64,000 nucleotides of DNA, from IMG/VR virus record IMGVR_UViG_3300005529_000001, positions 186,001 to 250,000 of that record. One strand, 5' to 3'. A model generated the notes under the pieces. That model saw nothing but the letters and a program-made list of their open reading frames with translations. It ran no database searches and was not told where the DNA came from. Shown here in pieces: positions 1,200 to 58,564 of this stretch (position 1 is its first letter; every line of letters starts with the position of its first letter). Position numbers and translations under genes: made by a program.

Positions 1200-4100
1200 A
1201 TGAGGGTCAGTCTGGGCGTCCTGAGGGACTACGTCTCCAACCTGTTGGTTGAGAATCGCATCGATGATGCACGTGAAAAATACCCCGACATCGAAGAGGA
1301 TGTCTTCCAAAACCTCGTCGCGAACCAACCCGGCGGGTCGAACAACAAGTACCTGATGTGGTCAGCCAAGCAGGTTGACGACGAGGTAATGCCTGAAGAG
1401 GTCATCATGGCCATCAGGTTGTTTCACGACAACGTTCACCGTCTCAAGCAAAAGGACATCAACCAGTACGAGAGCGTCGAAGCCCTCGACACCGCCATTG
1501 ACGAGCTCCAGAAGAACAAGAGCAAGAGCCAAGAAGCCAAGCAAGCGAAGGCTGACACCCAGGTCATCTACAACGACGACAACTGGCTCGTTGTCCGCCC
1601 GTACACTGCTGACGCATCATGCAAGTACGGCGCAGGTTCAAAGTGGTGCATCTCGGCCACTGCATCTCGCAACTACTTCAACTCGTACTCAGAGACCAAC
1701 AACAAGTTCTACTTTGTCATCGACAAGAAATCAACTAGCAACACGCCCAACTCAAAGTTCGCTATCGCTATCGTTGCAGCGGGCTTGGCTGCCGCCGGTC
1801 GCGAGATCCAGGTCTACAACGCCTCCGATAGCTTGGTGTCTCTGAACACCGTAGCTAGCGCCGTCGGTAGCAAGTGGCCTGAAATCTGGGAAAAGATCCA
1901 AGCTCACGTCGCAGCAAACCCGAAGACCCGTGAGGTCGAAGACGCTGAGAGAGCGACTGAAGAGCATGTTGCTGCGTTGTTGAAAGGCGAGAAGCTTAGC
2001 GACCAAGCGATGAAGAAGGTCGCCAAGAGCGGCAAGCTATCAAACCAAGTCATCAAGAAGATCCTCGGACGTTACGAGAACTACACGGGACCCACCGATT
2101 ACCGTGATGAACGACAGGACATCATGAACTCGTTGTCCAGCCGCGCCAGTGAGATGGAATCTGAAGGGGCGATGGCTGTATTGAAGTGGATCTCAGAGAA
2201 CAGCGCCAACAGCTATTGGCGTACTTCCTACCTCGAACGCATGTTGGCAGCCGCTCCCTTCAAACCAGAAGACTTCCGTGAGATCGCTAAGACTAACGAT
2301 GAAGAGATCCTCGCTAACATCTTTAGTAACCCAGCAACTCCTGATGACGTAAAGCGAGTGATCTCTGATGCTGCAATGCGTTTCGTGTCGGAGTCAGCTA
2401 CCCGAAAAGTTTACTGGGAGCTCATCAAGTCGGGTGCCATCACCAAAGAGCAGATGGCACACGCGATGGAGATGGATAACAAGAGGGGCTCATACAGGTA
2501 CCTGACAAGCCAGATCCTCAACCATCCTGAAGACGTTCGCATGGAACCCGAGTTGGTCAAGATGTTAACCATCAACAACGCAGGAGAGTTCAAAAACCTG
2601 TTGCGGATCCCGAACGTCCCACACGATTTTGCTGTCAAGATCCTCAGCAAGCTGATGAGCAGCGAGAGCCTGAAGAAATACGACATGCTCGAGTTGCTCC
2701 GGACAACACCGTTGGGTCCGAAGCAGATCGAGAAGCTGTGGGCTGACTGGCCCCAAGCAACCGTCAGGACAGCGTTGCTACAAAACCCTGGGATCGGTGA
2801 GGGGAACGCTAACAAGTTCGCCAAAAGCAAGAACAGCGCGTACCGTTTTTCGGTTGCACACAACACCATCACTCCAGTTGATGCGCTCAACACACTCTCC
2901 AAAGACGAGTCAGTCTCAACCAGGTCAGCTGTCGCTGCTAACCCCAAGACATCACCCGAGACGCTGTACACGCTAGCAAAGGACCAAGCTGTTGCGGTCA
3001 GAGCGAGCGTCGCTAGCAACGCATCGTCACCGACCAACCTTGTACGTGCTCTGAAACGAGACTCAGACGACTTTGTCAGGAAAGCTGCTCGGAAGACGCT
3101 CAAAGCTTTGGACGTGACAGAAGCTTACATCGGGATGGCGATGGGCATGCGTGGTTTGCTCGTTGAAGAGCTGACCGATGATGATGTCACGCCTGACATC
3201 ATGAACCCAAGCTGGCGTGACATCATTCCTAGCACCATTGACAAGGAAGAGTTTGTCGCGGTCTTTCTGTTGCAGAACAATGGTAGCGCAACGCGAGAAG
3301 AGATCACCAAAGCGTACAAGGATTGGATGGGCAGCGCTGGTGGAGCGGGCGAGCTCTGGAAGACAAACAAGTGGAGTGACCAGATCATCCGCGGCATCAT
3401 GTCTCAGGGTAAGGGCTGGTTCTGGTCGCCTCCAGGCATCAACAAAGGTGCTCTGTTTCGTCTGACGCCAGCAGGTGCGAGCGCAGCTTTGGACATTATC
3501 AGGAAACTCGCTCACCTCACGAACCTATCTTCTCCCGTACAGATCACGTCTGCCAAGGCTCGACCAGGAAAGACGTACTTTGTCAAGGGCGCTGAAGAAG
3601 CCCTTGACGTCACGGGCATGGAGAAGGGTGACCTTGAGGTCGAAGAAGTTGCAGCAAACTACAACAACGAGCCCATCAAGACTGATGGGAAATACACGAA
3701 GCTGTCACCAAACCGCAGCTGGCGACAGAAGCGCCGCCAACGCAGCGTGAAGATGTTCAAGTACACCTCCCCAACAGGGGAAGTGAAGTACACTCGAGAG
3801 CTTCCCAAGGTCTCCGTCCCCAACAATGCCAAGGTACAGTTCATCAAGACATTCCACGGCCAGGCGACGAATGACAGGTATTCCACCAGCGAACCCAACC
3901 GAGCGATCGTCAAGTACAACGACAAGTACCTGCTTGTCAAGTTCCCGATGTGGGCAAAAGAGGGTGGTGCTGTTCCAGACAACTCCGAAAAGGAGACAAA
4001 CGTACCGCCGCCCGTCAGGAAGTCTCCTCCACCACGTGAGCTGACGGGCGAACCCGCCGCTGCACCAGCACGAACTGGTGGGGGTGAAGCTCCCGCAGCT

Positions 4101-4313
4101 CCCCGTGGACCCAAAGTCGGTTACAAGATCTACGGCCGCCACCGTGGGGCTCCCGCTCACACGCGTCTGAAGGGCCAAGCTTACGCTGCACCTACAGACA
4201 CCCAGTTCTCACCCGGAGAGCAAGCGACCATCCAGGTCGGTGCTGATGGCAAGCTGAAGGTCAAGAAAGTGGCTGGCGATCACGAACAGACGTGGGACCC
4301 CGTCGAGGGTTGA
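1200..4313 (+). CDS. Large multidomain protein with LRV/HEAT-like helical repeats and shared N-terminal motif; candidate virion internal protein
   Basis: N-term MRVSLGVLRDYVSNLLVE; YGAGSKWC domain; ~24-aa repeats VAHNTITPVDALNTLSKDESVSTRSAVAANPKTSPETLYTLAKDQAVAVRASVASN. Confidence 0.75.
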   Translation: MRVSLGVLRDYVSNLLVENRIDDAREKYPDIEEDVFQNLVANQPGGSNNKYLMWSAKQVDDEVMPEEVIMAIRLFHDNVHRLKQKDINQYESVEALDTAIDELQKNKSKSQEAKQAKADTQVIYNDDNWLVVRPYTADASCKYGAGSKWCISATASRNYFNSYSETNNKFYFVIDKKSTSNTPNSKFAIAIVAAGLAAAGREIQVYNASDSLVSLNTVASAVGSKWPEIWEKIQAHVAANPKTREVEDAERATEEHVAALLKGEKLSDQAMKKVAKSGKLSNQVIKKILGRYENYTGPTDYRDERQDIMNSLSSRASEMESEGAMAVLKWISENSANSYWRTSYLERMLAAAPFKPEDFREIAKTNDEEILANIFSNPATPDDVKRVISDAAMRFVSESATRKVYWELIKSGAITKEQMAHAMEMDNKRGSYRYLTSQILNHPEDVRMEPELVKMLTINNAGEFKNLLRIPNVPHDFAVKILSKLMSSESLKKYDMLELLRTTPLGPKQIEKLWADWPQATVRTALLQNPGIGEGNANKFAKSKNSAYRFSVAHNTITPVDALNTLSKDESVSTRSAVAANPKTSPETLYTLAKDQAVAVRASVASNASSPTNLVRALKRDSDDFVRKAARKTLKALDVTEAYIGMAMGMRGLLVEELTDDDVTPDIMNPSWRDIIPSTIDKEEFVAVFLLQNNGSATREEITKAYKDWMGSAGGAGELWKTNKWSDQIIRGIMSQGKGWFWSPPGINKGALFRLTPAGASAALDIIRKLAHLTNLSSPVQITSAKARPGKTYFVKGAEEALDVTGMEKGDLEVEEVAANYNNEPIKTDGKYTKLSPNRSWRQKRRQRSVKMFKYTSPTGEVKYTRELPKVSVPNNAKVQFIKTFHGQATNDRYSTSEPNRAIVKYNDKYLLVKFPMWAKEGGAVPDNSEKETNVPPPVRKSPPPRELTGEPAAAPARTGGGEAPAAPRGPKVGYKIYGRHRGAPAHTRLKGQAYAAPTDTQFSPGEQATIQVGADGKLKVKKVAGDHEQTWDPVEG

Positions 4314-4661
4314 TCACCCGCCGTGGCCGACGACGCCGTTCACGACTGCAACGGTCGAGAACACAACATCGGGTGGTAACGAGATCGTCTGGGTGTTCTG
4401 TGACAACGTCACGATCTCCTGCTCACGAGCGTCAATCTCGCTCGCCATGCTTGATGCGATCTCAGCGAGCTGGCGAAGCTGTGCGGCGGTCAAGTGCCGA
4501 CTGAGGTACATCTCAGCCTTGCCGTCGCGGTAAGTCACCTGGAAGTCTTGGGTGTGAAGAGAGATCAACCCGCTCCCGGGCCCCTGTGACAGGGTGAAGT
4601 CGGGTTCGAGCGTGTGGGGTGGGCGACTCAGCGTTAGCCTTGTGTCATACGCGATGAGCAT
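4314..4661 (-). CDS. Hypothetical protein
   Basis: 115 aa ORF converging on the large + strand gene. Confidence 0.55.
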   Translation of the reverse strand: MLIAYDTRLTLSRPPHTLEPDFTLSQGPGSGLISLHTQDFQVTYRDGKAEMYLSRHLTAAQLRQLAEIASSMASEIDAREQEIVTLSQNTQTISLPPDVVFSTVAVVNGVVGHGG

Positions 4662-4665
4662 GTTT

Positions 4666-5034
4666 TTACTCCAAAGGTTTCATGTCAACGAAGCCCCACT
4701 GCCGTCGTTTGGGCCCGGTGATGACGATCGACCAGTTGACCTTCTGACCGGTGATGACGTTGTGAACGAACTCCGCAGGCCTGAACAGTACACTACCCGG
4801 GCCGCGCCACTTGCGTTCAGCCTGTGTCCGTTCTAGGTAACCACCCCATAACACGATCGCAACGAAAGACCACGGGTGATCGTGACCTTGCGGGTGCCAC
4901 ACTGGGCACCACAGCCTGTGAACAAACACCCTGAACCAGGGCGTGACCAACAACCGGTAGCGAGTGAACTCTTCGCCGACTTCGGTCCACCCGATCTCTT
5001 CGTGTGGAAAGATGTCAAACCAGCTCTTCACCAC
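4666..5034 (-). CDS. Cupin-fold protein
   Basis: HPQGHDHPWSF...GGYLE and FRPAEFVHNV cupin metal motifs. Confidence 0.75.
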   Translation of the reverse strand: MVKSWFDIFPHEEIGWTEVGEEFTRYRLLVTPWFRVFVHRLWCPVWHPQGHDHPWSFVAIVLWGGYLERTQAERKWRGPGSVLFRPAEFVHNVITGQKVNWSIVITGPKRRQWGFVDMKPLE

Positions 5035-5246
5035 TCACCAGGCCGGCAATACGATGGGTGCTCAGGATGGCGCCGGTCCATCCCGTGCTCGACGCAAAAT
5101 AATTCATGACAAAGTTTGCACTCATCACCGTAAGTGTGATGGAGGTTATGATCGTTGGGCGTGTTTCGCAGCGGCATCTCACATTGGGGACACTTGTACG
5201 TGGACGGACTAGATTGCGGAACGATTATCGGTGGCACCCACATCAC
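5028..5246 (-). CDS. Small Cys/His-rich zinc-finger protein
   Basis: CPQC...CKLC-x4-CVEH-x5-H pattern; coupled to dnaE stop. Confidence 0.55.
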   Translation of the reverse strand: MMWVPPIIVPQSSPSTYKCPQCEMPLRNTPNDHNLHHTYGDECKLCHELFCVEHGMDRRHPEHPSYCRPGEW

Positions 5247-8200
5247 GCGATCTCCTTCACCTTGTAAGCGCTGGTCGCAAACCCATAATCGTCCCGGCGG
5301 ACCTCAGCCGCCATCAGCTTGAAGGGCTCGTACAGGTCCTCTCGCCCCCACACCGTGAGGCGGACTGGCTTCCCGACCGGGCCCGTGACAAACGCTTGGA
5401 TGTACCCCTTCCCCTTCTTGGTCTTTTTCTGGAGCCCGGCGGTGGGCTTGCCACCCTTCTTACCCGCCGCCAGCACGGTGACGAACCAACAGAACCTGTT
5501 GTCGCCATGTTCCAGGTCTTCGATTGGGATGACTCCCATCTTGTCAAGCTTGCTGAGCATCGCCTGCTCAAACATCTGGGTCGGGTCCGAAGTGCCGAAG
5601 TAAAAGGCGTTGAACTCAACCCGTTCACGGTTCGTCCACTCGTCTCGGGCGTCGGTCTCGGCGAGGGCTCTCGCCAGCTCGTAAAAGTTCTTGCGCCCCT
5701 CGTGCGGGTCCTTCTTGGTTGACCGTCGGATCAGGGCCGCGTGTTCACGGACACGCTCGACCATGATGCCCGTGCCCTTCTTTTTCTCAACGGTGTCGGT
5801 GTACTCACCCAACAACGTTTCGTGCATGTGCTTGTACGACTTGAAGACCTTGTCCTCACCGATGCAGCCGACTGACTCGAAAGCGCCGATCTTGATGAGA
5901 GCTTCCAGCGCCTTCTTGTTGAACTTGCTGGGCCGCCAGGTTCCATCCTCGTTCCACAGCATCTCTTCTATGCTGTTGATGGGCCGCATCTGGATTATCT
6001 CCTCGACCGCTGACTCCCCCACCCCCTTCACCGACGTCATCGATGGCATCAGCTTCTTGCCTGGCAACACCGTCCAACCCAGGCCAGCATGGTTGATGTC
6101 GATCGGGACGATGGTGTAACCCAGGGCCCGTGCTTCACCAAATGCTTTGGCACGCTTGACGGGCGTCGTTGAGTACGCTTCAAGGTAAGCCGATAGCCAT
6201 TGTTCCTCGTAGTATGTCATCAGCCAGGCACACCAGAATGAATCGATAGCATACGCCACCGCGTGGGCCTTGTTGAAGCCGTAACCGGCAAAGTAGAGGA
6301 TCTTGTCATACAGGTTGTTGGCGACCTTGTCGGTGTAACCGTTCTTGATGCAACCTTGGACGAACCCGTCACGGGTCTCTTGTGCTGCTTTCTTTGCTGC
6401 CTCGCCGCCGGAGATCGACCGTTTCATGATGGCGCGGCGGACCTCATCGCACTTGTCCTTCGGGAAGCCAGCCACCTTCTCGGCGAGCTCCATGACCTGC
6501 TCCTGGAAGATGATGCAGGAGTTGGTCTTTTTCAGGATGTCATTGATGCGATGGTCACCCCACTCGAGCTCCTTTCCATCGTTCTTAGCCTCGAGGTACA
6601 GCTTGTCAACGTGAGCTGCCAACGGGCCCGGCCGGTAGATGCTGGTCAGGGTCGCGATGTCGATGATGCTCTTTGGCTTGGCCTTGACGAACAGGCGTTG
6701 CGCGCCTTGACTCGTCAGCTGGAAGATGCCTCCCCACTTCGCCTTCTCGTAAACTTCGTAAGGTTTGGGATCGTTGAAGTTGACCCTTGACGGATGAAGG
6801 TGTTCCTCGTACCATGCTTTGACATCGTCAAAAGCGTGGGGCTTGCCTTCCTTGATGAGGATCAGCTCGATCGTCCGCTCGATGAGTCGCAGAGTTTCAA
6901 GACCGAGCAGGTCATACTTGATGAACTCACCGATCTTCTCAAGGTGCTTGTAGTTGACGCCCTCGACCCAGGGTGATTGCGGTTCACGCTTGCCACCATC
7001 GCCCTTCGACGTCACGAGCGGCATCTTGTTGGGAAGGTCGTCGGCGATGAGAACGCCACCAGCGTGCCGACCCAATGACCTGTTCTGCTTGAACAGGATC
7101 TTGATTGACTCAGCCACCACGGGATTTTTGTCAATGAAAGACCTGAACGACGGTGACACGGGCGTGTTACATGACTCAGTGCAACCCTGACAGACTGACT
7201 TCGACACAGCGGTCTTGGGCGCCTTGCAATGGAAACCCATTGCCTCGTCATAGGTGAGGACGAACAGGTTCTTGTCATCGCCCTCCTTCATTGTTGCCTT
7301 GCGGACCTCGTCCTCGACTGACCGGGTCGCTGCATTGGTCTCCTCGAAGGAGACACCGTAAAACTTGCCGATGTCCTTCACCAGCGTCTTCAGCTTGAAA
7401 GTGTTGTAGTTGGAGATAGGAACAACGTTCTCCCAACCGAAGAAGCCCCGAAGCTGCTCCAGTACCTTGTCACGGTCAGCGAGGTCAGTGTCAATGTCAG
7501 GCGCGCCTTTGCGATAGACGCTAAGGAAACGGGCGAATGGCAAGTCCCAAAACAGAGGATCGAGGTCGGTGATGTAGAGGACGTAGGCGACCAACGAACC
7601 ACCGCCGGAACCACGACCGGGTCCGCAGAGGCACACCTTCCGCGCCAGCTCCATGATCTTCTGGTACGAGATGAAGTAGTCAGCGTTCTTCATCTGCTTG
7701 ATGACACCGAGCTCTTCTTTGATGCGATCGATATACTCGGGTCTGTCTTGCAAGCCACGTTTCCGCATACCGTCCATGCAGAGCTTGACCAGGTGATTGA
7801 AGGACGGCGTCCCCTCGGGGATCAGGAGCTTGTTGGGAAACTTGGGTGACCGATCGGGCGGAACCTCACCGATGACCTGGTGAGCGATGTCATGGGTCCG
7901 CTCGATCGCATCGGCGATCAAGTCGTCATCATAGAAACCCGTCCCATCCTTGGAGATGCAATACTCATCCCACATCTGCTGGGCGTTCTTCGGGTACAAC
8001 TCACACTTGAGCTGCTCTTTGGACTTGGGAAGAGAGTCAGCGTTGATCTCGGTGTAGTTCATCCAGCCGAGTTTCTTGTAGAGCTCACGGTCCTTCCACC
8101 GGTCAGGGTTGAAGTAGTGAGCATCACCAGTGACTATCAACTGTTGGGTCTTGTTGTTGCGACGGCAGAACTCGATGATGGCACGGTTCACCAGGTTCTG

Positions 8201-9034: not shown

Positions 9035-9083
9035 GTGTGTCCATCGTACCACTCGTCAAGTCAGTCCTACACCTTAAACGACA

Positions 9084-11595: not shown

Positions 11596-11602
11596 ATACT
11601 TA
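11596..11602 (+). promoter_or_regulatory. Putative late promoter ATACTTA
   Basis: 6 nt upstream of ATG 11609. Confidence 0.6.
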
Positions 11603-11608
11603 CCCATC

Positions 11609-12568
11609 ATGAAACCACAGCTGACAGAAGCTCACGTTGCCGAGATCATGGAACACTTGCTGGAGCGTTTCGGCGAGCCCATCGGCGATGCACAGGGTGA
11701 TCGCCAAGGGATCCCATCCAAGGGCGGTCGCAAGGAAAAGATGGGCAACCGGGGCTTCGGTGCGAAGCTTGAACACGTCGGGCTGCCCGGAGCGTGTGGG
11801 GGTTGTGGCGGCATGATGGGAATCGAGGGCGACACTTGCACTAACTGCGGCGAGATGCCCAACGCCCTGGAGCCCTCTCCCAGCCCGCCCAAGACTGCAG
11901 GCAACAGCGTCGCCATCGTTGTCAAGGGATCAACACCCGAGGGTGGCAGCCGCGGGGGCAAGTTCGCCCAGGGCCTGAAGGTCAAGGACATGGACGGCAT
12001 CCCATCAACGGGATCAGGCCGGGGCACGCAAGCTCCGGCATCCCCTCCGAAACCGATGCCCAAGGCTCCGGCTCCCGGTCCAGCTGAGCCCACCCCCATG
12101 CCAGCAACGCTCGATCAGGCTGACCTTGCGGGTGCTGATGAGCTCGACGAAGAGTCGACAGAAGACAAGCAAGAGCGTCTGCACTATGATATCGACCGTG
12201 ATGGCGAGGTTGGTGAGAGCCCGGAACACCGTGAGAAGGTTCTTGGTCACGAAGACGATGAGCTCGACGAAGATGCGATGCCAAGCGGCAGCTCTTCGCC
12301 CCCTCCTCCCCCGTCTAGCAGCTCTCCCGCTCCAGCACCAAAGCCACCGTCGCCCCCGCCATCATCAGGTGGATCATCACCCCCTCCCCCAAGCGGCGGG
12401 TCGTCATCGTCTCCGCCGCCCGCTGAGGAGATGCAGGAAGACATGGACCTCGATGAGGTCACGCCTCCCGGACGTGAGAAGCAAGTCAAAGCCCTGAAAA
12501 AGAAGGGCGACGTCAAGAACCCATGGGCAGTCGCTTGGTCTTCCTACAACAAGAGTCACAAGAAGTGA
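11609..12568 (+). CDS. Low-complexity acidic/Pro-rich protein, candidate head scaffold or internal protein
   Basis: Start MKPQLTEAHVAEIMEHLLE; CxxC pairs; P/S-rich tract; repeated ELDEE/ELDED/DLDEV; KNPWAVAW C-term. Confidence 0.7.
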   Translation: MKPQLTEAHVAEIMEHLLERFGEPIGDAQGDRQGIPSKGGRKEKMGNRGFGAKLEHVGLPGACGGCGGMMGIEGDTCTNCGEMPNALEPSPSPPKTAGNSVAIVVKGSTPEGGSRGGKFAQGLKVKDMDGIPSTGSGRGTQAPASPPKPMPKAPAPGPAEPTPMPATLDQADLAGADELDEESTEDKQERLHYDIDRDGEVGESPEHREKVLGHEDDELDEDAMPSGSSSPPPPPSSSSPAPAPKPPSPPPSSGGSSPPPPSGGSSSSPPPAEEMQEDMDLDEVTPPGREKQVKALKKKGDVKNPWAVAWSSYNKSHKK

Positions 12569-12570: not shown

Positions 12571-12885
12571 ATGAAAACAACAGTTGGTAATTTGAAGGCG
12601 ATGGTTGCTCAAGTCATCGCTGAAACCCGTGGTCACCTCAACCCACAGGAAGTGCTGACCACATACGAAGACCTGTACATCAACTCGGTCAGGAACAACC
12701 GCGCTGGTGACCACGCTATGGGCCCGGCGGGAGTTGTCCCGCTGGAGACGCTAGCCAGCATGCTCGGTGCATCGCCCGAACAGCTCGCTGCTGTGATGCA
12801 CAAAGCGGGTCTGATTGTTGATCGTGACGGCAACGTGGTCGAGCGCGGCAACACGCCGCCCCCGATGAAAGCCGTCAAGGGCTAA
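12571..12885 (+). CDS. Hypothetical protein with shared N-terminal motif
   Basis: Start MKTTVGNLKAMVAQVIAE, 2 nt after previous stop. Confidence 0.7.
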   Translation: MKTTVGNLKAMVAQVIAETRGHLNPQEVLTTYEDLYINSVRNNRAGDHAMGPAGVVPLETLASMLGASPEQLAAVMHKAGLIVDRDGNVVERGNTPPPMKAVKG

Positions 12886-12889: not shown

Positions 12890-14074
12890 TTAGTTCAGTG
12901 AGACGGTGAAGCCGACCTTTGAAAGGTCGACTGGGTGGGTCGTCCACTGGAGCCTGATGGGCTCACCTGCCGCAGCTTGCCTCTTGTTCCAGTGCTCGCA
13001 GAACATGTCGAGCGCTCGCTCGTCGATTGCACGGAAAGAACCACCGTGAGGCAACCAGCCGATGACAGGCATCGGGGTGACCTTGGTGTTGCCCTCGCCG
13101 AGACGGTACTTGCGAATCGCCATCGGGAGCTGCCCTTCCTGGACGCGGAACAACGTCTTGGCTTGCTCGATGAACTGCTCACCCGTCAGACGGGCCTCAA
13201 CCAGCTTGCGGACCGGGTCTTCGACCTCGTTGAGCTCGGGCAGCATGCCCTCGTTCAGGGCCTCTTCCTCTGCCTGTTGCTCGAGGTAAGCAAGCGTTGA
13301 CTTGAGGGCGTTCTCTCTCAGAGAGTTTCGTTCCATGGCGAGTTCTTCCTTTTCTTTGATCAGGTCTTTGACACACTTCAGAAGCTTGGTTTCGTCGATC
13401 TCAATCAATGACGTTGCCTTGATGCTGTTGCAGAATCGACGGACCGCCAACTCTTCCCAAGCGTATTCAATGTTACGTCCGTACTCGTGCATCAATCGCC
13501 AAGCTTGCTGGCGGTACCAAGTCTCGCTAAGTTCGGGACCCGGCGCGGTCTTGGCTGCGTCGCCGTAAGCTTCCGCGCCCTCAACCGGGTCATGGCCCAT
13601 CGGTTCAGCCTTGGGTTGGGAGACACCTGCCTCATGGAGCTTAGCTGCCTTGCGCTTGCGATAGATGAGACGCAGTTCATCATCATTCTTGAACTTCTTC
13701 AACATCTCGCGGACAGTCTCGAGCGGGACGCGGCTGGCGACGATGTGACGGACCTTGGGCTCAGCATCGCTCGTCAGCTTGCCAAGGAATTTCTCGGGCA
13801 CCACACGTGCCGCGAACTCACGGACTGACGGGTGACGGTGATCGAGGAAACCCGTTGTCACTTGAGCGAGGAAATCAAACCGAGACGAACGTCCCGTGCG
13901 GTCAAGGACATCCATCCAGCTGTTTGCTGACTGGACAACGTCTTCGATCCGGCCTTCAATGATGACCGCTGGACCAAGGACGCGCTTGATCTCATTCTTG
14001 AGTTCCTCAACTGCCCTCTCTTCGTCGAGGGTCCGCTTGACAGCGGCCTGTAGGTCCCTGAGGTTCAGACGCAT
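12890..14074 (-). CDS. Protein with shared N-terminal motif and LRV/HEAT-like repeats
   Basis: MRLNLRDLQAAVKRTLDEE; HPSVREFAARVVPEKFLGKLTSDAEPKVRHIVASR; AGGAG SD. Confidence 0.75.
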   Translation of the reverse strand: MRLNLRDLQAAVKRTLDEERAVEELKNEIKRVLGPAVIIEGRIEDVVQSANSWMDVLDRTGRSSRFDFLAQVTTGFLDHRHPSVREFAARVVPEKFLGKLTSDAEPKVRHIVASRVPLETVREMLKKFKNDDELRLIYRKRKAAKLHEAGVSQPKAEPMGHDPVEGAEAYGDAAKTAPGPELSETWYRQQAWRLMHEYGRNIEYAWEELAVRRFCNSIKATSLIEIDETKLLKCVKDLIKEKEELAMERNSLRENALKSTLAYLEQQAEEEALNEGMLPELNEVEDPVRKLVEARLTGEQFIEQAKTLFRVQEGQLPMAIRKYRLGEGNTKVTPMPVIGWLPHGGSFRAIDERALDMFCEHWNKRQAAAGEPIRLQWTTHPVDLSKVGFTVSLN

Positions 14075-14094: not shown

Positions 14095-14101
14095 TAAGTA
14101 T
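14095..14101 (-). promoter_or_regulatory. Putative late promoter ATACTTA
   Basis: Upstream of SD and ATG 14074. Confidence 0.6.
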
Positions 14102-14106: not shown

Positions 14107-14328
14107 TCAGGGGCGTCCCCTCTTCATCGGTCGAGACAGTCCCATCTTCTCAAGGTACGAGCTGATCTGCTTCTTGACATCGTTGGGCACCATGACGCTT
14201 TCTTTCTGGTGCGCAGGATCGTCTTCGAGCAGCTCGCTATATGTCTCGTCAGGCCGGGAGCCACCCCAACAATCGGGTTCGATCTCCTCAGATAACAGGT
14301 TCCGTAGCTGGCCCAGGGTTAAGCGCAT
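14107..14328 (-). CDS. Small protein with shared N-terminal motif
   Basis: MRLTLGQLRNLLSEE; TGATG overlap with upstream gene. Confidence 0.7.
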   Translation of the reverse strand: MRLTLGQLRNLLSEEIEPDCWGGSRPDETYSELLEDDPAHQKESVMVPNDVKKQISSYLEKMGLSRPMKRGRP

Positions 14329-14705
14329 CAAGCACCCTCAAGGGGGAACCAATCATCACGGTGTGGGTCCCAGGTTGCCAGCTCGACTTGCGGCATCTCA
14401 GCCATCGAGACCCGTAATTGCTGTCCGATCTTGAACCACAACGACCGGGCCTTGATGACCTGTGGATCGTCAGCAAACGGGTAATCTGGGAACATGTCAG
14501 GAACGACTTCGGCCCACGCGTCAGCAGCGCCGGGGAACATGTGCTCGACCTGGGCAGTTGACAGCTCTTGGTTCTCTTCTTCGACCTTGCCGAGCTTGAA
14601 TTGCCGGCCGCCGGGCTTAGTCTTTCGCAGGCCTCCTGACGGTGTCCCGAACTCGTTCAGAGCCTCAGCAAGCAGCTGCCGGACCTTGCCCCATGTCGTT
14701 TTCAT
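14328..14705 (-). CDS. Protein with shared N-terminal motif
   Basis: MKTTWGKVRQLLAEALNEF. Confidence 0.7.
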   Translation of the reverse strand: MKTTWGKVRQLLAEALNEFGTPSGGLRKTKPGGRQFKLGKVEEENQELSTAQVEHMFPGAADAWAEVVPDMFPDYPFADDPQVIKARSLWFKIGQQLRVSMAEMPQVELATWDPHRDDWFPLEGA

Positions 14706-14892
14706 GGAGACTAAATACCACGATCTCCCTGTCTAGACGCCGACGAGCACGGCGGAGACCCTTCTTGCGTCCCCACCGCCAGCTCGCGTGGCGTTTCTTG
14801 TCACGGTAGCACGGGACCATGCCCGCGTGGAGACCGTCCCAACCGTGCATGCTGGGACGCTGAGCGCGGATAACGCTAGCCGCCGCGCTCAC
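14665..14892 (-). CDS. Possible small basic protein
   Basis: GTGA-coupled to HNH gene, Arg-rich; overlaps next gene. Confidence 0.35.
   Translation of the reverse strand: MSAAASVIRAQRPSMHGWDGLHAGMVPCYRDKKRHASWRWGRKKGLRRARRRLDREIVVFSLHENDMGQGPAAAC
14712..14718 (-). promoter_or_regulatory. Putative late promoter GTATTTA
   Basis: 6 nt upstream of ATG 14705, no SD. Confidence 0.55.
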
Positions 14893-15486: not shown

Positions 15487-15873
15487 TCATTTGAAGGTAA
15501 TCGAGTGACCGCAGCCACACCGTGACGCTTCACGAGGATTGTCAAACTCAAAACCCTGCTTCATCAACGTCTTTGTCCAACTCACTGTTGAACCCGACAA
15601 GTAAATGGCTGACTTCTTGTCAACCATGAAAATCAAGCCGCCCTCTTGCCATGAAATGTCCCTGAGTCCGGGCATGTCGTACTCGAAACCAAGGTAGTAA
15701 GTGAAACCCGAGCAACCCCCGCCCGTCAGCCCAAACCGGTAACCCACAGGACCCATTCCGGGATCCCTCTCGCCCAGCGCCAGCTGCTTCTGGAACTGCT
15801 CGAGGGCCTCAGGAGTAATCTTGACGACGGGGTCCATTGCCACACCGTACCGAGAACGCAAATTCTTGTTCAA
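15487..15873 (-). CDS. iscA: IscA/HesB Fe-S cluster assembly A-type carrier
   Basis: KITPEA, GGGCSGFTY, FEFDNP...CGCGHS; start may be ATG 15837. Confidence 0.9.
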   Translation of the reverse strand: MNKNLRSRYGVAMDPVVKITPEALEQFQKQLALGERDPGMGPVGYRFGLTGGGCSGFTYYLGFEYDMPGLRDISWQEGGLIFMVDKKSAIYLSGSTVSWTKTLMKQGFEFDNPREASRCGCGHSITFK

Positions 15874-26029: not shown

Positions 26030-26066
26030 GCCCGAACCTTAATCCAGACCAGGACGGGTTTTTCAC

Positions 26067-26576: not shown

Positions 26577-26601
26577 AGGATAGGGGCGCCCACGTCCGTG
26601 T

Positions 26602-31801: not shown

Positions 31802-32068
31802 TTACACCCGACGGGTGAAGTTGAATAACGCATCTTCTAAGACGTCGTAAAGCTTTTCTTCAAGAGTATCACACACATCATTCATCGCAGCAATGGCTTC
31901 ACGCTGGTCTGATGGGTTCTCGCTCTTGTTCAGCAAGATGAATTGCTTGATCCGATCACGGACCTGATCGACAAAGTCAGTCGTGTCTTGGCGCAGCGCC
32001 CATTCTGGAACGCCGTGAAGGTATTCTTCTCTGATCAGCTTTCTGACGGCGCCAAGTCTGACTTTCAC
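31802..32068 (-). CDS. Small protein with shared N-terminal motif
   Basis: MKVRLGAVRKLIREE. Confidence 0.72.
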   Translation of the reverse strand: MKVRLGAVRKLIREEYLHGVPEWALRQDTTDFVDQVRDRIKQFILLNKSENPSDQREAIAAMNDVCDTLEEKLYDVLEDALFNFTRRV

Positions 32069-32436
32069 GCGACAGCTTTCTTAGCGACTGGAGCGGGCTG
32101 TTCAGCTGAACCCGCTTTGGTTGCCTCGGCCCAAGCAGTTTGGACTGCTTTGTGAACACGAGCCATCATCACCTCGGTTGCCTTGTTGGACGCTGCTTTG
32201 ATCTGCTCCCAAGCTTGATCATCGAACTCACGGGTCTCCGCGTTGTATTGGTCCTTTGCCGCGAGCATCATGTTCTGCTGGATCGCGCCCCGAAACGGTT
32301 GCTCTAGCGATGCAAGCGCTTTTGCGATGTTCGGCTGGTCCATCGGATCCTGGACAGGCTTGTTGTTCGCAAACGCAGACGGCGAGACCGCGACCTCTCG
32401 CAAGATCCGTTTCAAAGTGCCCAACCGAACCCTCAT
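32065..32436 (-). CDS. Protein with shared N-terminal motif
   Basis: MRVRLGTLKRILREV. Confidence 0.72.
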   Translation of the reverse strand: MRVRLGTLKRILREVAVSPSAFANNKPVQDPMDQPNIAKALASLEQPFRGAIQQNMMLAAKDQYNAETREFDDQAWEQIKAASNKATEVMMARVHKAVQTAWAEATKAGSAEQPAPVAKKAVA

Positions 32437-32439: not shown

Positions 32440-32979
32440 TCAGTGCCTCCCGCGGGGATGCATGGGAGGCAGGACAGCGTCTTCATCACCGCTAGCGTGG
32501 TAACCGCGTTGCGGCTCACGGCCCGTCGGGGCGTGCTTCTCTGGACCGCCAACATCGACATGGCCCGTGCCACCTGTAACCCCGCCAGCTTTCCCAGTAT
32601 TCCGCGGGTGCATCGGGAGGATGTCATCCTCATCCATCTCGTCAAACTCACCCGACTGGAGCATGTCAGCCGTCTCTCTGACGTCGTTCTCGATCAACCG
32701 GCACAAGTAATGAGAAGCGAGCTTGGCTGCGCGCCCATCGTCTACTTCTACGCCCTCATAGAGCTGGTTGTCTGAGTGAAAAGCCTCGATCAGGTCAATG
32801 ATCGCGTGCTGGAGCGCTGTCGAGAGCTCGACCTTTCTGGGCGTCTCATCGAGCAACTCATCTTCTGCATCGATCCCTTCAAGGATCCGGTGACGCTCCT
32901 GCTGAGAGCTGTGAAACGCTCGTGACTCTTCGATGACGATCTCGTTGATCATCTCCTCTTGACGCTTCGTGAGCCCCAT
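32440..32979 (-). CDS. Acidic protein with looser form of shared N-terminal motif
   Basis: MGLTKRQEEMINEIVIEE after AGGAG SD; PMHPR repeated twice. Confidence 0.68.
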   Translation of the reverse strand: MGLTKRQEEMINEIVIEESRAFHSSQQERHRILEGIDAEDELLDETPRKVELSTALQHAIIDLIEAFHSDNQLYEGVEVDDGRAAKLASHYLCRLIENDVRETADMLQSGEFDEMDEDDILPMHPRNTGKAGGVTGGTGHVDVGGPEKHAPTGREPQRGYHASGDEDAVLPPMHPRGRH

Positions 32980-32998: not shown

Positions 32999-33005
32999 TA
33001 AGTAT
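32999..33005 (-). promoter_or_regulatory. Putative late promoter ATACTTA
   Basis: Heads the three-gene motif operon 31802..32979. Confidence 0.6.
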
Positions 33006-41957: not shown

Positions 41958-42188
41958 TCATTTCCTACGAGGCTTGTTCTTTTTCCTACCGAGACGATCT
42001 GGGTCCATGCCGAGAGGTGCCGTGTATCCTGCGATACCGCCGCCAACCGCTGCGAACTCGTCCATCTCCTCAGTTGCCTCTTCCGTTTCGCCTTCGTGAC
42101 TTCCGTCCGACACGAGCTGGTTTGGAACCCTTGCCAGGTGACCTTCGACCACTTGCCTAATATAACGCATGAGCAGTTTAGAGCTCAT
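41958..42188 (-). CDS. Small acidic protein with looser form of shared N-terminal motif
   Basis: MSSKLLMRYIRQVVE; EEMDEF. Confidence 0.65.
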   Translation of the reverse strand: MSSKLLMRYIRQVVEGHLARVPNQLVSDGSHEGETEEATEEMDEFAAVGGGIAGYTAPLGMDPDRLGRKKNKPRRK

Positions 42189-42192
42189 GATC

Positions 42193-42199
42193 TAAATAG
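42193..42199 (-). promoter_or_regulatory. Putative late promoter CTATTTA
   Basis: 4 nt upstream of ATG 42188. Confidence 0.5.
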
Positions 42200-54918: not shown

Positions 54919-55212
54919 TCACAGGGGCCACGGGACGCCCAAGATCCGCTCGAACTCCCGGGCGCTCGCGTGTTTCAGGTTGAGCTTTTGCATCACTGTC
55001 TCAACTGTCGCACCAGACCTGTTGAGTTCCTGCTGGAAACGTCGAGATGCCATCAATGCGCTACTGACGGCTTGCACTTCCGCGGGAGTTCCCCTGATCT
55101 TCAGGTTTATGGCCCTGCCGACCAACCAAGCCGCTGCTGCAGTGAAAAAGATCTTCCCGAGCAAGTTGAGCTTTAGCTCGTTTATCGAAACCTTGGTGTC
55201 AACGCCGTCCAT
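54919..55212 (-). CDS. Hypothetical tail-associated protein
   Basis: 97 aa; CTATTTA motif (55218-55224) lies 5 nt upstream. Confidence 0.65.
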   Translation of the reverse strand: MDGVDTKVSINELKLNLLGKIFFTAAAAWLVGRAINLKIRGTPAEVQAVSSALMASRRFQQELNRSGATVETVMQKLNLKHASAREFERILGVPWPL

Positions 55213-55227
55213 GACCCTAAATAGGCC

Positions 55228-56970: not shown

Positions 56971-57462
56971 TCAGTCAGCTGCGGGTGGAAACAGGTCAGG
57001 ACGAGATTTCATCCATTCATCAGCTTCTTTAGCGAACTGTTCGACTTTCTCGGTCACCGTGTAGAGCAGCGAGTTCCCCCGTTTGCCTACGTCCTTGACC
57101 AAGCCTCGAACCAGGACGCCCTGGGCCAACGGTCCCGTCACATCGTTTGGGACTTCTTCATAGTTCCCAAGGAAACGACCCGGGGTCTCCGGGTCTTGGA
57201 CGAGTTGGCCGTGTTCGTTACGTTGCCACTGCATCTTCATTCTCGTTGCAGGGGCCCAGTACGAAACGTTGCTCGTTGGCTTGAAGCTAACGGGATCCTT
57301 GCCTTCAAGGCTATGAACTTGCTGCATCACCTCGGGACGGGTCAGCGGACGCCCAGCATGCCACAGAACATAACAGATCATGTGGACCTTGTCTCCGGGA
57401 TAGCCCCTGTCACCGACAGCTTCCCGGATCACGGACTTCAGCTCTGCGAGGGTCAGCTGCAT
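56971..57462 (-). CDS. Protein with shared N-terminal motif
   Basis: MQLTLAELKSVIREA; ATACATA (57468-57474) lies 5 nt upstream. Confidence 0.72.
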   Translation of the reverse strand: MQLTLAELKSVIREAVGDRGYPGDKVHMICYVLWHAGRPLTRPEVMQQVHSLEGKDPVSFKPTSNVSYWAPATRMKMQWQRNEHGQLVQDPETPGRFLGNYEEVPNDVTGPLAQGVLVRGLVKDVGKRGNSLLYTVTEKVEQFAKEADEWMKSRPDLFPPAAD

Positions 57463-57492
57463 GCTCATATGTATCGCGTGTGTCAGAAACGA

Positions 57493-57529
57493 CAAGCCCC
57501 GGGCATCGTTTCAGACGAGCCGGGACTTG
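57493..57529 (-). terminator. Terminator-like hairpin after tail tube gene
   Basis: CAAGTCCCGG...CCGGGGCTTG imperfect long stem followed by TCGTTTCT. Confidence 0.55.
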
Positions 57530-57551
57530 GAGGCAGGACCGCCGCTGTCTA

Positions 57552-58109
57552 CCGGTGACAGGAGAACCAGCGGCGCCCGCACCTGGCCGGAGTGCCAGGA
57601 ATCAGAACTGCAGAACGGCGTTGTCGAAGCGCAGCGTCAGGCTGATCTCAGCCAGGGTACCGTCTTCATAGGTGAGCTCGCCGAAGTTAGCTTCGGTTAT
57701 CCAGGCGCCCTTGATGTCCCAGAGCTCGACAACGGTGCCGACCGGGTCAAGCAGCTTCAGCTGGATGTCACGCTTGTAGAAGTCAGCGTAGCCAGCGCGG
57801 CCCGAGACAGTCTCCAGGGTCAGGCGGATCCACTCCATGACCTGCTGCGCGCCCGAGGGAGCGATCGGGTCATAGAGCGTCACAGCCAGGGTATTGAACT
57901 TCGTCAATCCCGCAAGGTAACGACGGAAGTTGATGAACGGCACCTCGACCTCTTCCGTGGTCACGGTCGGGCGTGCAGTGGTCTTCATGATGTAGGCGTC
58001 GATTCCCTCGATCATGAGCACCCAACGGTTCTTCCGCTTGGGTTCAAACTTGTTTGGAAGCATCGACGTTACGTCGAGTGTCTCAGCCATTTTTCTCTCC
58101 TGTCACCGG
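57552..58109. repeat. 14-bp perfect inverted repeat flanking tail tube gene
   Basis: ccggtgacaggaga (57552-57565) vs tctcctgtcaccgg (58096-58109). Confidence 0.9.
57602..58090 (-). CDS. Tail tube protein (T4 gp19-like)
   Basis: FEPKRKNRW, RPTV..EEVEVPFIN..RYLAG..F..L.VTLYD, LLDPVG..VELW...GAWI...NFGEL.Y. Confidence 0.9.
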   Translation of the reverse strand: MAETLDVTSMLPNKFEPKRKNRWVLMIEGIDAYIMKTTARPTVTTEEVEVPFINFRRYLAGLTKFNTLAVTLYDPIAPSGAQQVMEWIRLTLETVSGRAGYADFYKRDIQLKLLDPVGTVVELWDIKGAWITEANFGELTYEDGTLAEISLTLRFDNAVLQF

Positions 58110-58118
58110 GTTCGATCG

Positions 58119-58125
58119 TAACTAT
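58119..58125 (-). promoter_or_regulatory. Putative late promoter ATAGTTA
   Basis: Upstream of tube leader and SD. Confidence 0.55.
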
Positions 58126-58156
58126 CGGCCTTGCGAGTTCGCTGCCCCTTGCGGGA

Positions 58157-58564
58157 TCAGTTCTGTCCGTACATCGCCGCCTCGGCGGTCTGGACAAATT
58201 GCTTGATTCGTTTCAAATAGTTGGCAGCACTGTCTTCGTCGCCGATGCTGACGGCGTTCTCGAGACGTTCGACAGAAGCCTTCAGCATCCCGACCGTCTT
58301 GCCGACCTTTTCTAGGCGAGGGTTACCCTTGCTGATCTTCTTCTCGCTGCCGGAGTAGTTGAACAGGTCCTCATTCATGACGCTGTGCTCAATGAGCGCA
58401 TCATCATATTCTTCATCAACGATCTGTTGCAACTGTTCTAGCGTTACGATGGGCCCGCTGATCTGCACGGGCTCACGGTAAACGGGCACGTCTTCGCCAA
58501 GGTCCAGCTTACGCCGGACAGCTTCGCGGATGATGCTTCGGAGCTGGTTCTTTGTCACCTTCAT
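58157..58564 (-). CDS. Protein with shared N-terminal motif (plus an internal copy)
   Basis: MKVTKNQLRSIIREA; internal IVTLEQLQQIVDEE; TGATTTA at 58575-58581. Confidence 0.75.
   Translation of the reverse strand: MKVTKNQLRSIIREAVRRKLDLGEDVPVYREPVQISGPIVTLEQLQQIVDEEYDDALIEHSVMNEDLFNYSGSEKKISKGNPRLEKVGKTVGMLKASVERLENAVSIGDEDSAANYLKRIKQFVQTAEAAMYGQN

What the first reader, a model, noticed from the sequence alone, without database searches (positions are those of the whole stretch)
1200..58564. Family of unrelated proteins sharing an N-terminal amphipathic peptide ending in Glu: candidate capsid-targeting/cargo system
Seen: nine otherwise unrelated proteins start with about M-[KRQ]-[VLT]-[TSRN]-x-x-x-[LV]-[RKQ]-x-x-[ILV]...E: 1200 MRVSLGVLRDYVSNLLVE, 12571 MKTTVGNLKAMVAQVIAE, 14074 MRLNLRDLQAAVKRTLDEE, 14328 MRLTLGQLRNLLSEE, 14705 MKTTWGKVRQLLAE, 32068 MKVRLGAVRKLIREE, 32436 MRVRLGTLKRILRE, 57462 MQLTLAELKSVIRE, 58564 MKVTKNQLRSIIRE. 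Looser copies occur at 11609, 32979 and 42188. Every one, or the head of its operon, is preceded by the AT-rich motif that also precedes the sheath and tube genes, although most lie among replication/metabolic genes; all three + strand genes belong to the set. Established: T4 internal proteins carry a ~10-aa capsid-targeting sequence (MKTYQEFIAE-type) removed by prohead protease gp21, which cleaves after Glu in (I/L)xE. Inference: a longer, analogous packaging signal loads a diverse cargo set into the head for injection, with genes added as portable promoter+tag cassettes. I cannot confirm whether this motif has been described.
Basis: partly seen in the sequence, partly recalled or inferred. 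Interest (0 to 1): 0.85.

Follow-up and report, generated by a model that had tools for sequence, protein, structure and literature searches.

The report
Shared head-targeting leader on phage proteins
A 370-kb soil phage related to T4 puts the same 14- or 18-residue N-terminal peptide, ending in the T4 head-protease cleavage motif, on many unrelated proteins; this is most likely a longer version of T4's capsid-targeting tag, so it may let the packaged proteins of uncultured phages be read from sequence.

Summary
All nine N-termini are at the stated positions. A profile built from them scores them at 22 bits or more and every other candidate start at 11 bits or less. Conservation is at the amino-acid level, and the mature parts are unrelated.

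The leader is 14 aa in six genes and 18 aa in three, and it always ends [LI]-x-E, the T4 gp21 cleavage motif.

By walking the 369.5-kb contig I found a gp21-type protease (Peptidase_S77, catalytic His and Ser conserved) and a Gp23 capsid protein. The capsid protein's L-K-E60 aligns with T4's known L-T-E65 cleavage site. Four more leader proteins lie inside that head module.

The leader is widespread. It occurs in relatives' head modules, in a 484-kb huge phage, and in at least 120 IMG/VR stretches (MKITKSQLKQIIKEE type). Thirty of 79 such loci carry T4-type terminase, portal or protease genes, with leader genes between portal and protease, where T4 has core genes 67 and 68.

Intervals between conserved genes hold varying sets of leader genes in relatives.

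Best reading: a T4-like capsid-targeting propeptide, a new variant of a known kind. Packaging, cleavage and injection are inferred, not shown.

The parts
1200..4313 (+). Leader protein, 1037 aa. The 18-aa leader MRVSLGVLRDYVSNLLVE is at 1200-1253. The body has a HEAT/LRV-repeat solenoid plus domains of unknown function.
   Evidence: There are at least 50 orthologs, and E18 is invariant in 29 of 29 aligned. AlphaFold2 gives pLDDT below 50 for residues 1-4 and 13-18, and the folded body starts at residue 20. Foldseek matches the PP2A A subunit, a solenoid.
12571..12885 (+). Leader protein, 104 aa. The 18-aa leader MKTTVGNLKAMVAQVIAE is at 12571-12624. It is the second gene of the + strand unit headed by 11609.
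   Evidence: leave-one-out rank 2.
12890..14074 (-). Leader protein, 394 aa, with LRV repeats. The 18-aa leader MRLNLRDLQAAVKRTLDE is at 14021-14074.
   Evidence: It is weak in leave-one-out (rank 58), but the ortholog in L224 keeps MRLKLSDLQKVVKETLQE.
14107..14328 (-). Leader protein, 73 aa. The 14-aa leader is MRLTLGQLRNLLSE. Its start overlaps the stop of the upstream gene.
   Evidence: leave-one-out rank 2.
14328..14705 (-). Leader protein, 125 aa. The 14-aa leader is MKTTWGKVRQLLAE.
   Evidence: leave-one-out rank 1. TATTTA lies 6 nt upstream.
31802..32068 (-). Leader protein, 88 aa, GTG start. The 14-aa leader is (M)KVRLGAVRKLIRE.
   Evidence: The family is conserved, leader included, in L177, L178, L179, L180, L181 and L184.
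32065..32436 (-). Leader protein, 123 aa. The 14-aa leader is MRVRLGTLKRILRE.
   Evidence: Orthologs are present in L180 and L181.
32440..32979 (-). Probable leader protein, 179 aa, with the variant 18-aa leader MGLTKRQEEMINEIVIEE. It heads the operon that contains 32436 and 32068.
   Evidence: Not among the listed profile hits (down to 4.3 bits). The family M[GRK]LT[KP]RQA..[VI]N.II.EE is conserved in relatives. TACTTA is at 32999-33004.
56971..57462 (-). Leader protein, 163 aa, in the tail module. The 14-aa leader is MQLTLAELKSVIRE.
   Evidence: The L001 ortholog begins MELTLRQLRRLIRE, with GATACTTAGAGCC upstream.
58157..58564 (-). Leader protein, 135 aa, between the sheath and tube genes. 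The 14-aa leader is MKVTKNQLRSIIRE.
   Evidence: The first 23 aa are identical in three homologs whose best local alignments are only 42-70% identical.
11609..12568 (+). Possible leader protein, 319 aa, rich in Pro, Ser and Gly and probably disordered. N-terminus MKPQLTEAHVAEIMEHLLE.
   Evidence: TACTTA lies 6 nt upstream. Not recognised by the profile, and no ortholog was examined.
41958..42188 (-). Probable leader protein, 76 aa, with the variant 15-aa leader MSSKLLMRYIRQVVE.
   Evidence: TATTTA lies 4 nt upstream. Orthologs in L224 and L264 begin MS..[KR]...[YF][IV]R..[VL].E, and in L264 three canonical leader genes follow.
1187..1192 (+). TACTTA late-promoter-like element, 7 nt before the ATG at 1200.
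11597..11602 (+). TACTTA element heading the unit 11609 then 12571.
14095..14100 (-). TACTTA element, 20 nt before the ATG at 14074.
14712..14717 (-). TATTTA element heading the unit 14705 then 14328.
32999..33004 (-). TACTTA element heading the unit 32979 then 32436 then 32068.
42193..42198 (-). TATTTA element, 4 nt before the ATG at 42188.
61743..61748 (-). TACTTA element before the tail sheath gene. This is the reference late gene within the window.
   Evidence: The same element precedes the capsid, scaffold and other head genes outside the window.

Best explanation
The shared N-terminus is a capsid-targeting propeptide of the T4 type. It is a basic, amphipathic helix of about 12 residues (M-[KR]-[VLT]-[TRS]-x-G/x-x-[LV]-[KR]-x-[LIV]-[LIV]). 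It is followed, at residue 14 or 18, by an [LI]-x-E site.

Proposed mechanism. Late in infection, proteins carrying the leader dock by this helix onto the scaffolding core of the growing prohead and are enclosed by the shell. The gp21-family protease then cuts after the Glu. This frees the mature protein inside the head, and it leaves with the DNA at the next infection.

What is shown:
- the motif and its specificity;
- the presence of the protease;
- the conserved cleavage-type site in the capsid protein;
- the placement of leader genes in head modules;
- the spread of the motif across a large uncultured T4-like lineage.

What is inferred: docking, cleavage, packaging and ejection.
For: 1. 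All nine leaders end [LI]-x-E: LVE, IAE, LDE, LSE, LAE, IRE, LRE, IRE, IRE. T4 gp21 cleaves after L/I-X-E (PMC9026906). T4's own leaders, read from NC_000866, end FIAE|A, ITE|A, LIAE|A and LLRE|S.
2. The contig encodes a Peptidase_S77 protease (Pfam E 1.7e-24; PDB 5JBL T4 gp21 E 2.6e-15). A His and a Ser-Ser pair are invariant across the four aligned proteases; I take these to be the catalytic residues.
3. The capsid protein (Gp23, E 5.9e-78) has an invariant Glu60 in VLKE|V. It aligns with T4 LTE|AE, which I take from my own knowledge to be the cut; the 65-residue gp23 propeptide is stated in PMC5694885.
4. The head module holds further leader proteins: 164 aa MPLTRGELKALVKELIVE, 182 aa MTIGQLKREIRE, 93 aa and 105 aa.
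5. In 79 relatives' head loci the profile finds 41 such ORFs, including conserved families of about 140 aa and about 100 aa between protease and capsid gene.
6. A DNA-pattern scan of IMG/VR found at least 120 stretches. Of 102 complete ORFs, 101 are 40 aa or longer. Thirty of 79 loci carry T4-type head genes, in the orders p287>LEADER>protease and protease>LEADER>scaffold>capsid. In T4 the genes between portal and protease are core genes 67 and 68.
7. When hits are defined on residues 1-12 only, Glu is at position 14 in 72 of 96 distinct N-termini, against a 5.8% background.
8. Orthologs of the 1037-aa protein have a length-variable leader, but Glu18 is invariant and is followed by a strongly conserved RVDDAREK. 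In the AlphaFold2 model the site falls in a low-confidence linker.
9. TAYTTA precedes the capsid, scaffold and sheath genes and also the leader units.
10. None of about 28 Pfam-annotated enzymes carries the leader.
11. The T4 literature states that T-even internal proteins share only the targeting sequence (PMC3012670).
Against: - There is no direct evidence of packaging or cleavage. No cultured relative with virion proteomics was found.
- The leader has no detectable sequence homology to the T4 targeting sequence: no hit of 8 bits or more in the T4 loci.
- In relatives, position 16 is hydrophobic in 68 of 96 N-termini and Glu15 is common. The helix therefore runs on past Glu14, which would also fit an uncleaved helix.
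- [LI]-x-E is not depleted in the mature parts (23 observed against 19.8 +/- 4 expected).
- Some leader genes lie directly upstream of the large terminase, where a small terminase subunit would be expected. They have no annotation.
- Two leader genes sit in the tail module.
Confidence: 0.6

Rival explanations
1. The helix is a docking or oligomerisation element of prohead core or scaffold-type proteins that is not removed. It would not mark injected cargo. Instead, the proteins would be structural or assembly factors of the head (or of head and tail) that bind a common partner.
For: - The helix continues past Glu14 in many relatives (position 16 hydrophobic in 68 of 96).
- The best-conserved families lie inside head modules.
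- Two window genes flank the tail tube gene.
- Some leader genes sit in the small-terminase slot.
Against: - A Glu at a fixed distance after a hydrophobic pair, with P3 Leu or Ile, is needed for a protease site but not for a docking helix.
- Tandem sites (VKE-LVE-LSE-G) occur in the 140-aa family.
- Glu18 is invariant at the junction with the conserved body of the 1037-aa family, despite insertions and deletions in the leader.
- The variable arrays of unrelated small genes among replication genes look like accessory cargo rather than assembly factors.
Confidence: 0.2
2. The leader targets late proteins to some other common partner or place that has nothing to do with the capsid. Examples are the membrane, a host complex, or a chaperone or quality-control factor.
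For: - It is an amphipathic basic helix (hydrophobic moment 0.23-0.66 for the nine).
- Most window members lie among replication genes.
- The mature parts have no known function.
Against: - There is a strong, repeated linkage to T4-type head genes in loci that were picked only by the leader pattern (30 of 79).
- The leader ends in the cleavage motif of the head protease.
- There is no hydrophobic core or signal-peptide character.
Confidence: 0.12
3. It is not a protein signal at all. It would be a nucleotide-level feature of late, nearly leaderless mRNAs, recent duplication of a 5' gene segment, or chance resemblance of helical N-termini.
For: Several members have TAYTTA only 4-7 nt before the ATG, so the 5' coding sequence could influence initiation.
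Against: - Synonymous codons vary freely: only 44 of 137 identical residue pairs share a codon, and third positions are 32% identical.
- Members inside operons have the leader too.
- The motif is kept across lineages with very different base composition.
- The profile separates members from the other 2,864 candidate starts by 11 bits.
Confidence: 0.03

Closest known systems
Capsid targeting sequence (CTS) of phage T4 internal proteins IPI/II/III and Alt, removed by prohead protease gp21 (Mullaney and Black 1996; reviewed in PMC9026906, PMC3012670, PMC5694885)
   Same: - A short N-terminal peptide is the only thing shared by otherwise unrelated proteins.
- It ends in L/I-x-E.
- The genome has a gp21-family (Peptidase_S77) protease and a Gp23 capsid protein with the cleavage-type site conserved.
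- The same kind of leader is also found on head-module proteins (in T4: gp22 and gp24).
- Internal-protein repertoires differ between related T-even phages.
   Different: - It is 14 or 18 residues, not 10, with its own consensus (MK[VLI]T...L[KR]..[IV][IV].E). There is no detectable homology to MKTYQEFIAE.
- There are many more genes: 13-16 in about 100 kb of this genome.
- Cargo includes a conserved HEAT-repeat protein of about 1000 aa.
- It is spread over a large uncultured lineage with the gene order terminase-portal-p287-protease-scaffold-capsid.
- Nothing has been shown experimentally.
Propeptides of inner-body and ejection proteins of phiKZ, 201phi2-1 and SPN3US, cut by gp175 or gp245 (distant gp21 homologs)
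   Same: - Many head proteins are processed after Glu at a three-residue motif.
- Propeptides can hold several sites.
- The diverged paralogs gp53 and gp54 of SPN3US keep identical 15-residue N-termini (PMC5694885). This resembles the 23 identical residues in the homologs of 58157-58564.
   Different: - The motif there is A/S/G-x-E, whereas here P3 is Leu or Ile as in T4.
- Most of those propeptides exceed 100 residues and belong to paralog families rather than to unrelated proteins.
Cargo-loading peptides of encapsulins
   Same: A short terminal peptide directs diverse cargo into a shell built from an HK97-fold protein.
   Different: - In the encapsulins I know of, the peptide is usually C-terminal, binds the shell directly and is not cleaved.
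- No phage scaffold or protease is involved.
- This comparison comes from my own knowledge and was not tested here.

Membership tests
T4-type capsid-targeting propeptide system | A short N-terminal peptide (10-20 aa) shared by otherwise unrelated proteins | tested here: met
   Nine proteins score 22 bits or more against the profile, and the next-best candidate start scores 11 bits. The mature parts are unrelated by BLAST.
T4-type capsid-targeting propeptide system | The peptide ends in the gp21 cleavage motif L/I-x-E | tested here: met
   Met in 9 of 9. In relatives, Glu14 is present in 72 of 96 N-termini defined on residues 1-12 only. The motif itself is taken from PMC9026906.
T4-type capsid-targeting propeptide system | The genome encodes a gp21-family prohead protease with its catalytic residues | tested here: met
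   L088 815-1474: PF03420 E 1.7e-24; PDB 5JBL E 2.6e-15; His91 and Ser146/147 invariant, taken to be the catalytic residues. The gene lies on the same contig but outside the window.
T4-type capsid-targeting propeptide system | Bona fide head proteins of the same phage carry the same kind of site or leader | tested here: met
   The capsid protein's L-K-E60 aligns with T4 L-T-E65. Head-module proteins of 164, 182, 93 and 105 aa carry the leader.
T4-type capsid-targeting propeptide system | Late expression together with head genes | tested here: inconclusive
   TAYTTA is shared with the capsid, scaffold and sheath genes and heads 7 of the 9 leader genes' units. There are no transcript data, and 2 of the 9 have only one-mismatch variants.
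T4-type capsid-targeting propeptide system | Sequence homology to the T4 targeting sequence (MKTYQEFIAE) | tested here: not met
   The profile finds nothing at 8 bits or more in the T4 ip, alt and head loci. The lengths and consensus differ. It is therefore an analog or a distant variant, not a sequence-family member.
T4-type capsid-targeting propeptide system | The peptide is necessary and sufficient for incorporation into the prohead, and is removed by the protease | not testable with these tools
   This needs virion proteomics or fusion experiments.
phiKZ/SPN3US-type head propeptides | Cleavage motif A/S/G-x-E and long (over 100 aa) propeptides | tested here: not met
   P3 is Leu or Ile in all nine, and the leaders are 14-18 aa. 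The phiKZ/SPN3US motif is taken from PMC5694885.
T4 prohead core proteins gp67/gp68 | Homology of the leader proteins lying between portal and scaffold to T4 gp68 | tested here: not met
   hhalign of the 140-aa family (A5) against T4 gp68 gives probability 0.13. The correspondence is positional only. gp67 was not tested.

The most novel reading that the evidence does not exclude
A tag that can be recognised from sequence alone (MK[LIV]T...L[KR]..I[IV].E[E]) marks the whole set of proteins loaded into the head, and probably injected, across a very large uncultured T4-like lineage. That lineage includes 370-480-kb phages and abundant marine phages. A single genome would carry a dozen or more such proteins, and hypervariable arrays between conserved genes would act as a fast-evolving arsenal delivered with the DNA. 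Injected proteomes could then be predicted from metagenomes, and the tag could be reused to load foreign proteins.
Probability: 0.45. Interest if true: 0.78.

Novelty: new variant of a known kind. Interest (0 to 1): 0.64.

Why it matters
T4's capsid-targeting sequence has been documented experimentally only in T4 and its close relatives. Reviews merely suggest that it might be a general way for T4-like phages to load proteins (PMC9026906).

If this leader is the equivalent tag, three things follow.
- The packaged and injected proteins of thousands of uncultured phages, huge phages included, could be listed by a simple profile search.
- The variable arrays would point to candidate counter-defence or take-over proteins that act before any phage gene is expressed.
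- The tag-plus-protease pair would offer a new handle for loading cargo into large capsids.

No Pfam or PHROG family covers the leader, and I found no paper that describes it.

Tried and rejected
- **Nucleotide-level explanation.** Rejected on codon diversity.
- **Searches of cultured phages.** tblastn of a 29-aa leader, of a marine leader protein and of the 1037-aa protein all gave no match. No isolate with proteomics could be brought in.
- **Family searches.** Pfam and PHROGs on 40 leader proteins gave only LRV repeats and two PHROGs of unknown function.
- **PDB sequence search of cargo.** Only an LRV repeat matched.
- **Atlas and Foldseek on the 1037-aa protein.** They showed a HEAT/ARM solenoid and no enzyme.
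- **Homology to T4 gp68.** hhalign of the 140-aa head-module family found none.
- **Depletion of [LI]-x-E in mature parts.** None seen, so the test is uninformative.
- **First attempt to reach the head module.** Using the Mel-JY01 capsid protein as the query was swamped by its own close relatives (57-71% identical capsid proteins). Walking the contig worked instead.
- **P-SSM2 (Kyanoviridae).** Its head module lacks the leader, so the leader is not a feature of all T4-like phages.
- **gp32-like protein (40877-41827).** Its N-terminus resembles the motif by eye, but it is not among the listed profile hits, which run down to 4.3 bits.

Full report
**What the window is.** It is the reverse complement of bases 277,610-341,609 of a 369,506-bp metagenomic contig (ENA ERZ27279688 k141_1055159). 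The same genome was assembled independently as a 369,475-bp JGI/IMG-VR contig with a different start point, so it is probably complete and circular or circularly permuted. GC content is 55%, and almost all genes are on the - strand.
- Positions 43-64 kb hold a T4-like tail module: sheath, gp19 tube, a T4 baseplate protein and a large putative tape-measure protein.
- Positions 4-43 kb hold replication and nucleotide-metabolism genes: Pol III alpha, a class II-like ribonucleotide reductase, ThyX, dUTPase, RecA/UvsX, a gp32-like protein, DnaB, a flap nuclease, methylases and an RNA-repair set.
- The nearest cultured phages are distant. Capsid protein identity is 34-42% to Microcystis phage Mel-JY01, the Flavobacterium immuto phages and Rhodothermus phage RM378, and 50% to the uncultured 484-kb phage LR756508.

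Nine of these are at gene starts, and there are two internal matches in 20,801 residues of called proteins.
- A profile built from the nine scores them at 22-34 bits. The best of the other 2,864 ORF starts scores 11 bits.
- In leave-one-out tests the six 14-residue members rank first or second. The three 18-residue members rank 2, 4 and 58.
- The constraint is on the protein. Leu, Arg and other residues use different codons, only 44 of 137 identical residue pairs share a codon, and third positions are 32% identical.
- After residue 24 the proteins show no similarity to each other.

The three 'looser' copies are not recognised by the profile. Two of them are nonetheless conserved leader variants in relatives: the 32979 family reads M[GRK]LT[KP]RQA..[VI]N.II.EE, and the 42188 family reads MS.[KR]...[YF][IV]R..[VL].E.

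**The promoter claim is partly right.** TAYTTA occurs 11 times in the window, against 6.0 +/- 2.3 in shuffles. Ten of the 11 copies lie 4-52 nt upstream of a start codon on the coding strand.
- The element heads the transcription units that contain seven of the nine leader genes.
- The other two (58564 and 57462) have one-mismatch variants, and the tube gene has TAGTTA.
- Outside the window the same element precedes the capsid, scaffold and other head genes.

This makes it a plausible late promoter, although there are no transcript data.

**Is there a gp21-like protease?** Yes. I walked the contig with exact-protein look-ups and reached the head module about 16 kb beyond the window's right end. 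Its gene order is:

terminase, 105-aa protein, T4-type portal, 287-aa protein, Peptidase_S77 protease, 138-aa protein, GIY-YIG endonuclease, peptide deformylase, 164-aa protein, 93-aa protein, 180-aa protein, 706-aa scaffold-like protein, Gp23 capsid protein, 153-aa protein, 182-aa protein.

- The protease matches Pfam PF03420 (E 1.7e-24) and the solved T4 gp21 structure 5JBL (E 2.6e-15). His91 and Ser146/147 are invariant across the four aligned proteases, and I take them to be the catalytic residues.
- Aligned with T4 gp23, the capsid protein has an invariant Glu60 in V-L-K-E|V opposite T4's L-T-E|A-E.
- T4 gp23 loses a 65-residue propeptide (PMC5694885), and gp21 cuts after L/I-X-E (PMC9026906).

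So the specificity the hypothesis needs is plausible for this phage.

**The leader is tied to head assembly.** Four proteins in the head module carry it:
- 164 aa, MPLTRGELKALVKELIVE (19.7 bits);
- 182 aa, MTIGQLKREIRE (a 12-residue form);
- 93 aa, with the motif body displaced by 8 residues;
- 105 aa, between terminase and portal, MTTKTPKVTLERLKEIIAEE.

Evidence from relatives and from wider collections points the same way.
- In 79 IMG/VR head loci with 69-90% capsid identity, the window-trained profile finds 41 ORFs. These include conserved families of about 140 aa and about 100 aa between protease and capsid gene.
- In the 140-aa family the first 23 residues are nearly invariant (MK.TK.ELKAIVKECLVEILSEG, with three tandem hydrophobic-x-E sites). 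They are followed by a hypervariable linker.
- LR756508 has at least ten such N-termini in 41 kb around its capsid gene.
Of the 102 complete ORFs, 101 are 40 aa or longer, with a median of 107 aa. They are typically MKITKSQLKQIIKEEL..., often in tandem arrays.
- These loci were chosen only by the leader pattern, yet 30 of 79 contain T4-type terminase, portal, p287 or S77 protease genes homologous to this phage's. The leader genes lie upstream of the terminase, between p287 and the protease, or between the protease and the scaffold. In T4 the genes between portal and protease are the prohead core genes 67 and 68.
- hhalign found no homology between the 140-aa family and gp68, so that correspondence is positional only.

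**Evidence that the Glu is a functional boundary.**
- When hits in relatives are defined on residues 1-12 alone, Glu is at position 14 in 72 of 96 distinct N-termini, against a 5.8% background. Most of the rest have it at position 15.
- The 1037-aa protein has at least 50 orthologs. Their leaders share the first 11-13 residues. They then differ by insertions of 0 to about 7 residues. They rejoin at hydrophobic-hydrophobic-x-E followed by a strongly conserved RVDDAREK. Glu18 is invariant in 29 of 29, and many longer leaders also have a Glu14 site.
- In the AlphaFold2 model (mean pLDDT 82.6), residues 1-4 and 13-18 fall below 50, a short helix spans residues 5-12, and the confident body begins at residue 20.
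- Homologs of 58157-58564 keep the first 23 residues identical, while their best local alignments are only 42-70% identical.

**Cargo and cassettes.** None of the cargo has a recognisable enzymatic domain.
- Two proteins carry LRV/HEAT repeats, and the 1037-aa protein's centre is a PP2A-A-like solenoid.
- The rest are small and mostly acidic or neutral, and some are disordered.
- The reductase-ThyX interval holds one to four leader genes in eleven relatives, in different combinations.
- The HD-gp32 interval holds one leader gene in L224 and four in L264.
- L001 has an extra leader gene between sheath and tube.

This resembles the variable internal-protein repertoires of T-even phages (PMC3012670; PMC9026906). 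The 1037-aa and 88-aa families, by contrast, are vertically conserved, so 'portable cassette' fits only part of the set.

**Weighing.** The best-supported reading is a T4-type capsid-targeting propeptide of a new sequence class. The following count against certainty.
- There is no experimental link.
- There is no sequence homology to the T4 tag.
- The helix often continues beyond Glu14.
- [LI]-x-E sites are not depleted in the mature parts.
- Some leader genes occupy the small-terminase slot.
- P-SSM2, a T4-like cyanophage, lacks the leader in its head module, so it belongs to one T4-like lineage and not to all.

I put the capsid-targeting, cleaved-propeptide model at about 0.6. An uncleaved head-assembly docking helix gets about 0.2, another common partner about 0.1, and artefact or RNA-level explanations a few percent.

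**Novelty.** The mechanism class is known from T4, and in a different form from phiKZ and SPN3US. This leader, its breadth and its expansion in huge phages appear to be undescribed. No Pfam or PHROG family covers it, and four literature searches found only the T4, phiKZ and SPN3US work.

Noticed in passing
window 1187-1200, 11597-11609, 14705-14717, 16821-16835, 42188-42198, 55212-55223: TAYTTA ends only 4-7 nt before the ATG of six genes, and there is no Shine-Dalgarno sequence. If the element acts like a -10 box, these late mRNAs would be leaderless or nearly so. The capsid, scaffold and sheath genes, by contrast, have 17-30-nt leaders; GGAG is seen before the capsid and scaffold genes.
   Followed up: partly
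window, e.g. upstream of 1153, 27663, 28825, 29534, 30796, 51129: A second hexamer family, TAGGAT/TAGGGT, is enriched just upstream of starts (TAGGAT: 7 of its 15 copies). It may be another promoter class or a ribosome-binding variant.
   Followed up: no
window 28415-28825 (-): A tail-tube paralog (33% identical to the tube protein 57602-58090, E 6e-21) sits alone among nucleotide-metabolism genes. It has no Pfam hit.
   Followed up: partly
window 61835-63997 (-), continuing in L002 6703-9891: A second sheath-like protein of 1062 aa lies directly upstream of the 1048-aa sheath (32% identity, E 1e-159). There are therefore two sheath paralogs in tandem.
   Followed up: partly
window 5243-9052 (-), 43082-44311 (-): The phage encodes a bacterial-type DNA polymerase III alpha subunit (PHP, NTPase, finger and HHH domains). 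It also encodes a separate 409-aa family A polymerase-like protein.
   Followed up: no
window 22029-27663 (-): An RNA-repair set is present: RNA ligase, a polynucleotide kinase-phosphatase and an RlaP-family nucleotidyltransferase.
   Followed up: no
window 15870-16841 (-): The LD-carboxypeptidase (Peptidase_S66) gene probably starts at ATG 16823, 6 nt after a TACTTA, and not at the upstream GTG. It is the one late-promoter unit in the replication region that lacks a leader.
   Followed up: partly
window 54919-55212 (-): This 97-aa protein before the large putative tape-measure gene has the motif body displaced by 5 residues (TKVSINELKLNLLGKIF). It lacks the Glu and runs into a hydrophobic stretch, and it has its own TATTTA. 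I did not count it as a member.
   Followed up: no
L088 1932-3187 (outside the window, head module): A GIY-YIG endonuclease and a peptide deformylase lie between the prohead protease and the scaffold and capsid genes.
   Followed up: no
window 11609-12568 (+): This 319-aa protein is very rich in Pro, Ser and Gly, with long PPPP/SSS runs and a Cys cluster (CGGCGG...CTNCG). It is probably largely disordered.
   Followed up: no
L003 7916-8452 and L170 8421-8642, 8644-9726 (cultured phages Mel-JY01 and immuto 3-5A): Head-module proteins of these isolates begin with leader-like helices: MNKSDIIDFIKKIRE and MKKSQIVKAVQEVLEE. One has ...KEHFIAE|A, the same ending as the T4 tag. These phages could serve as experimental entry points.
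   Followed up: partly
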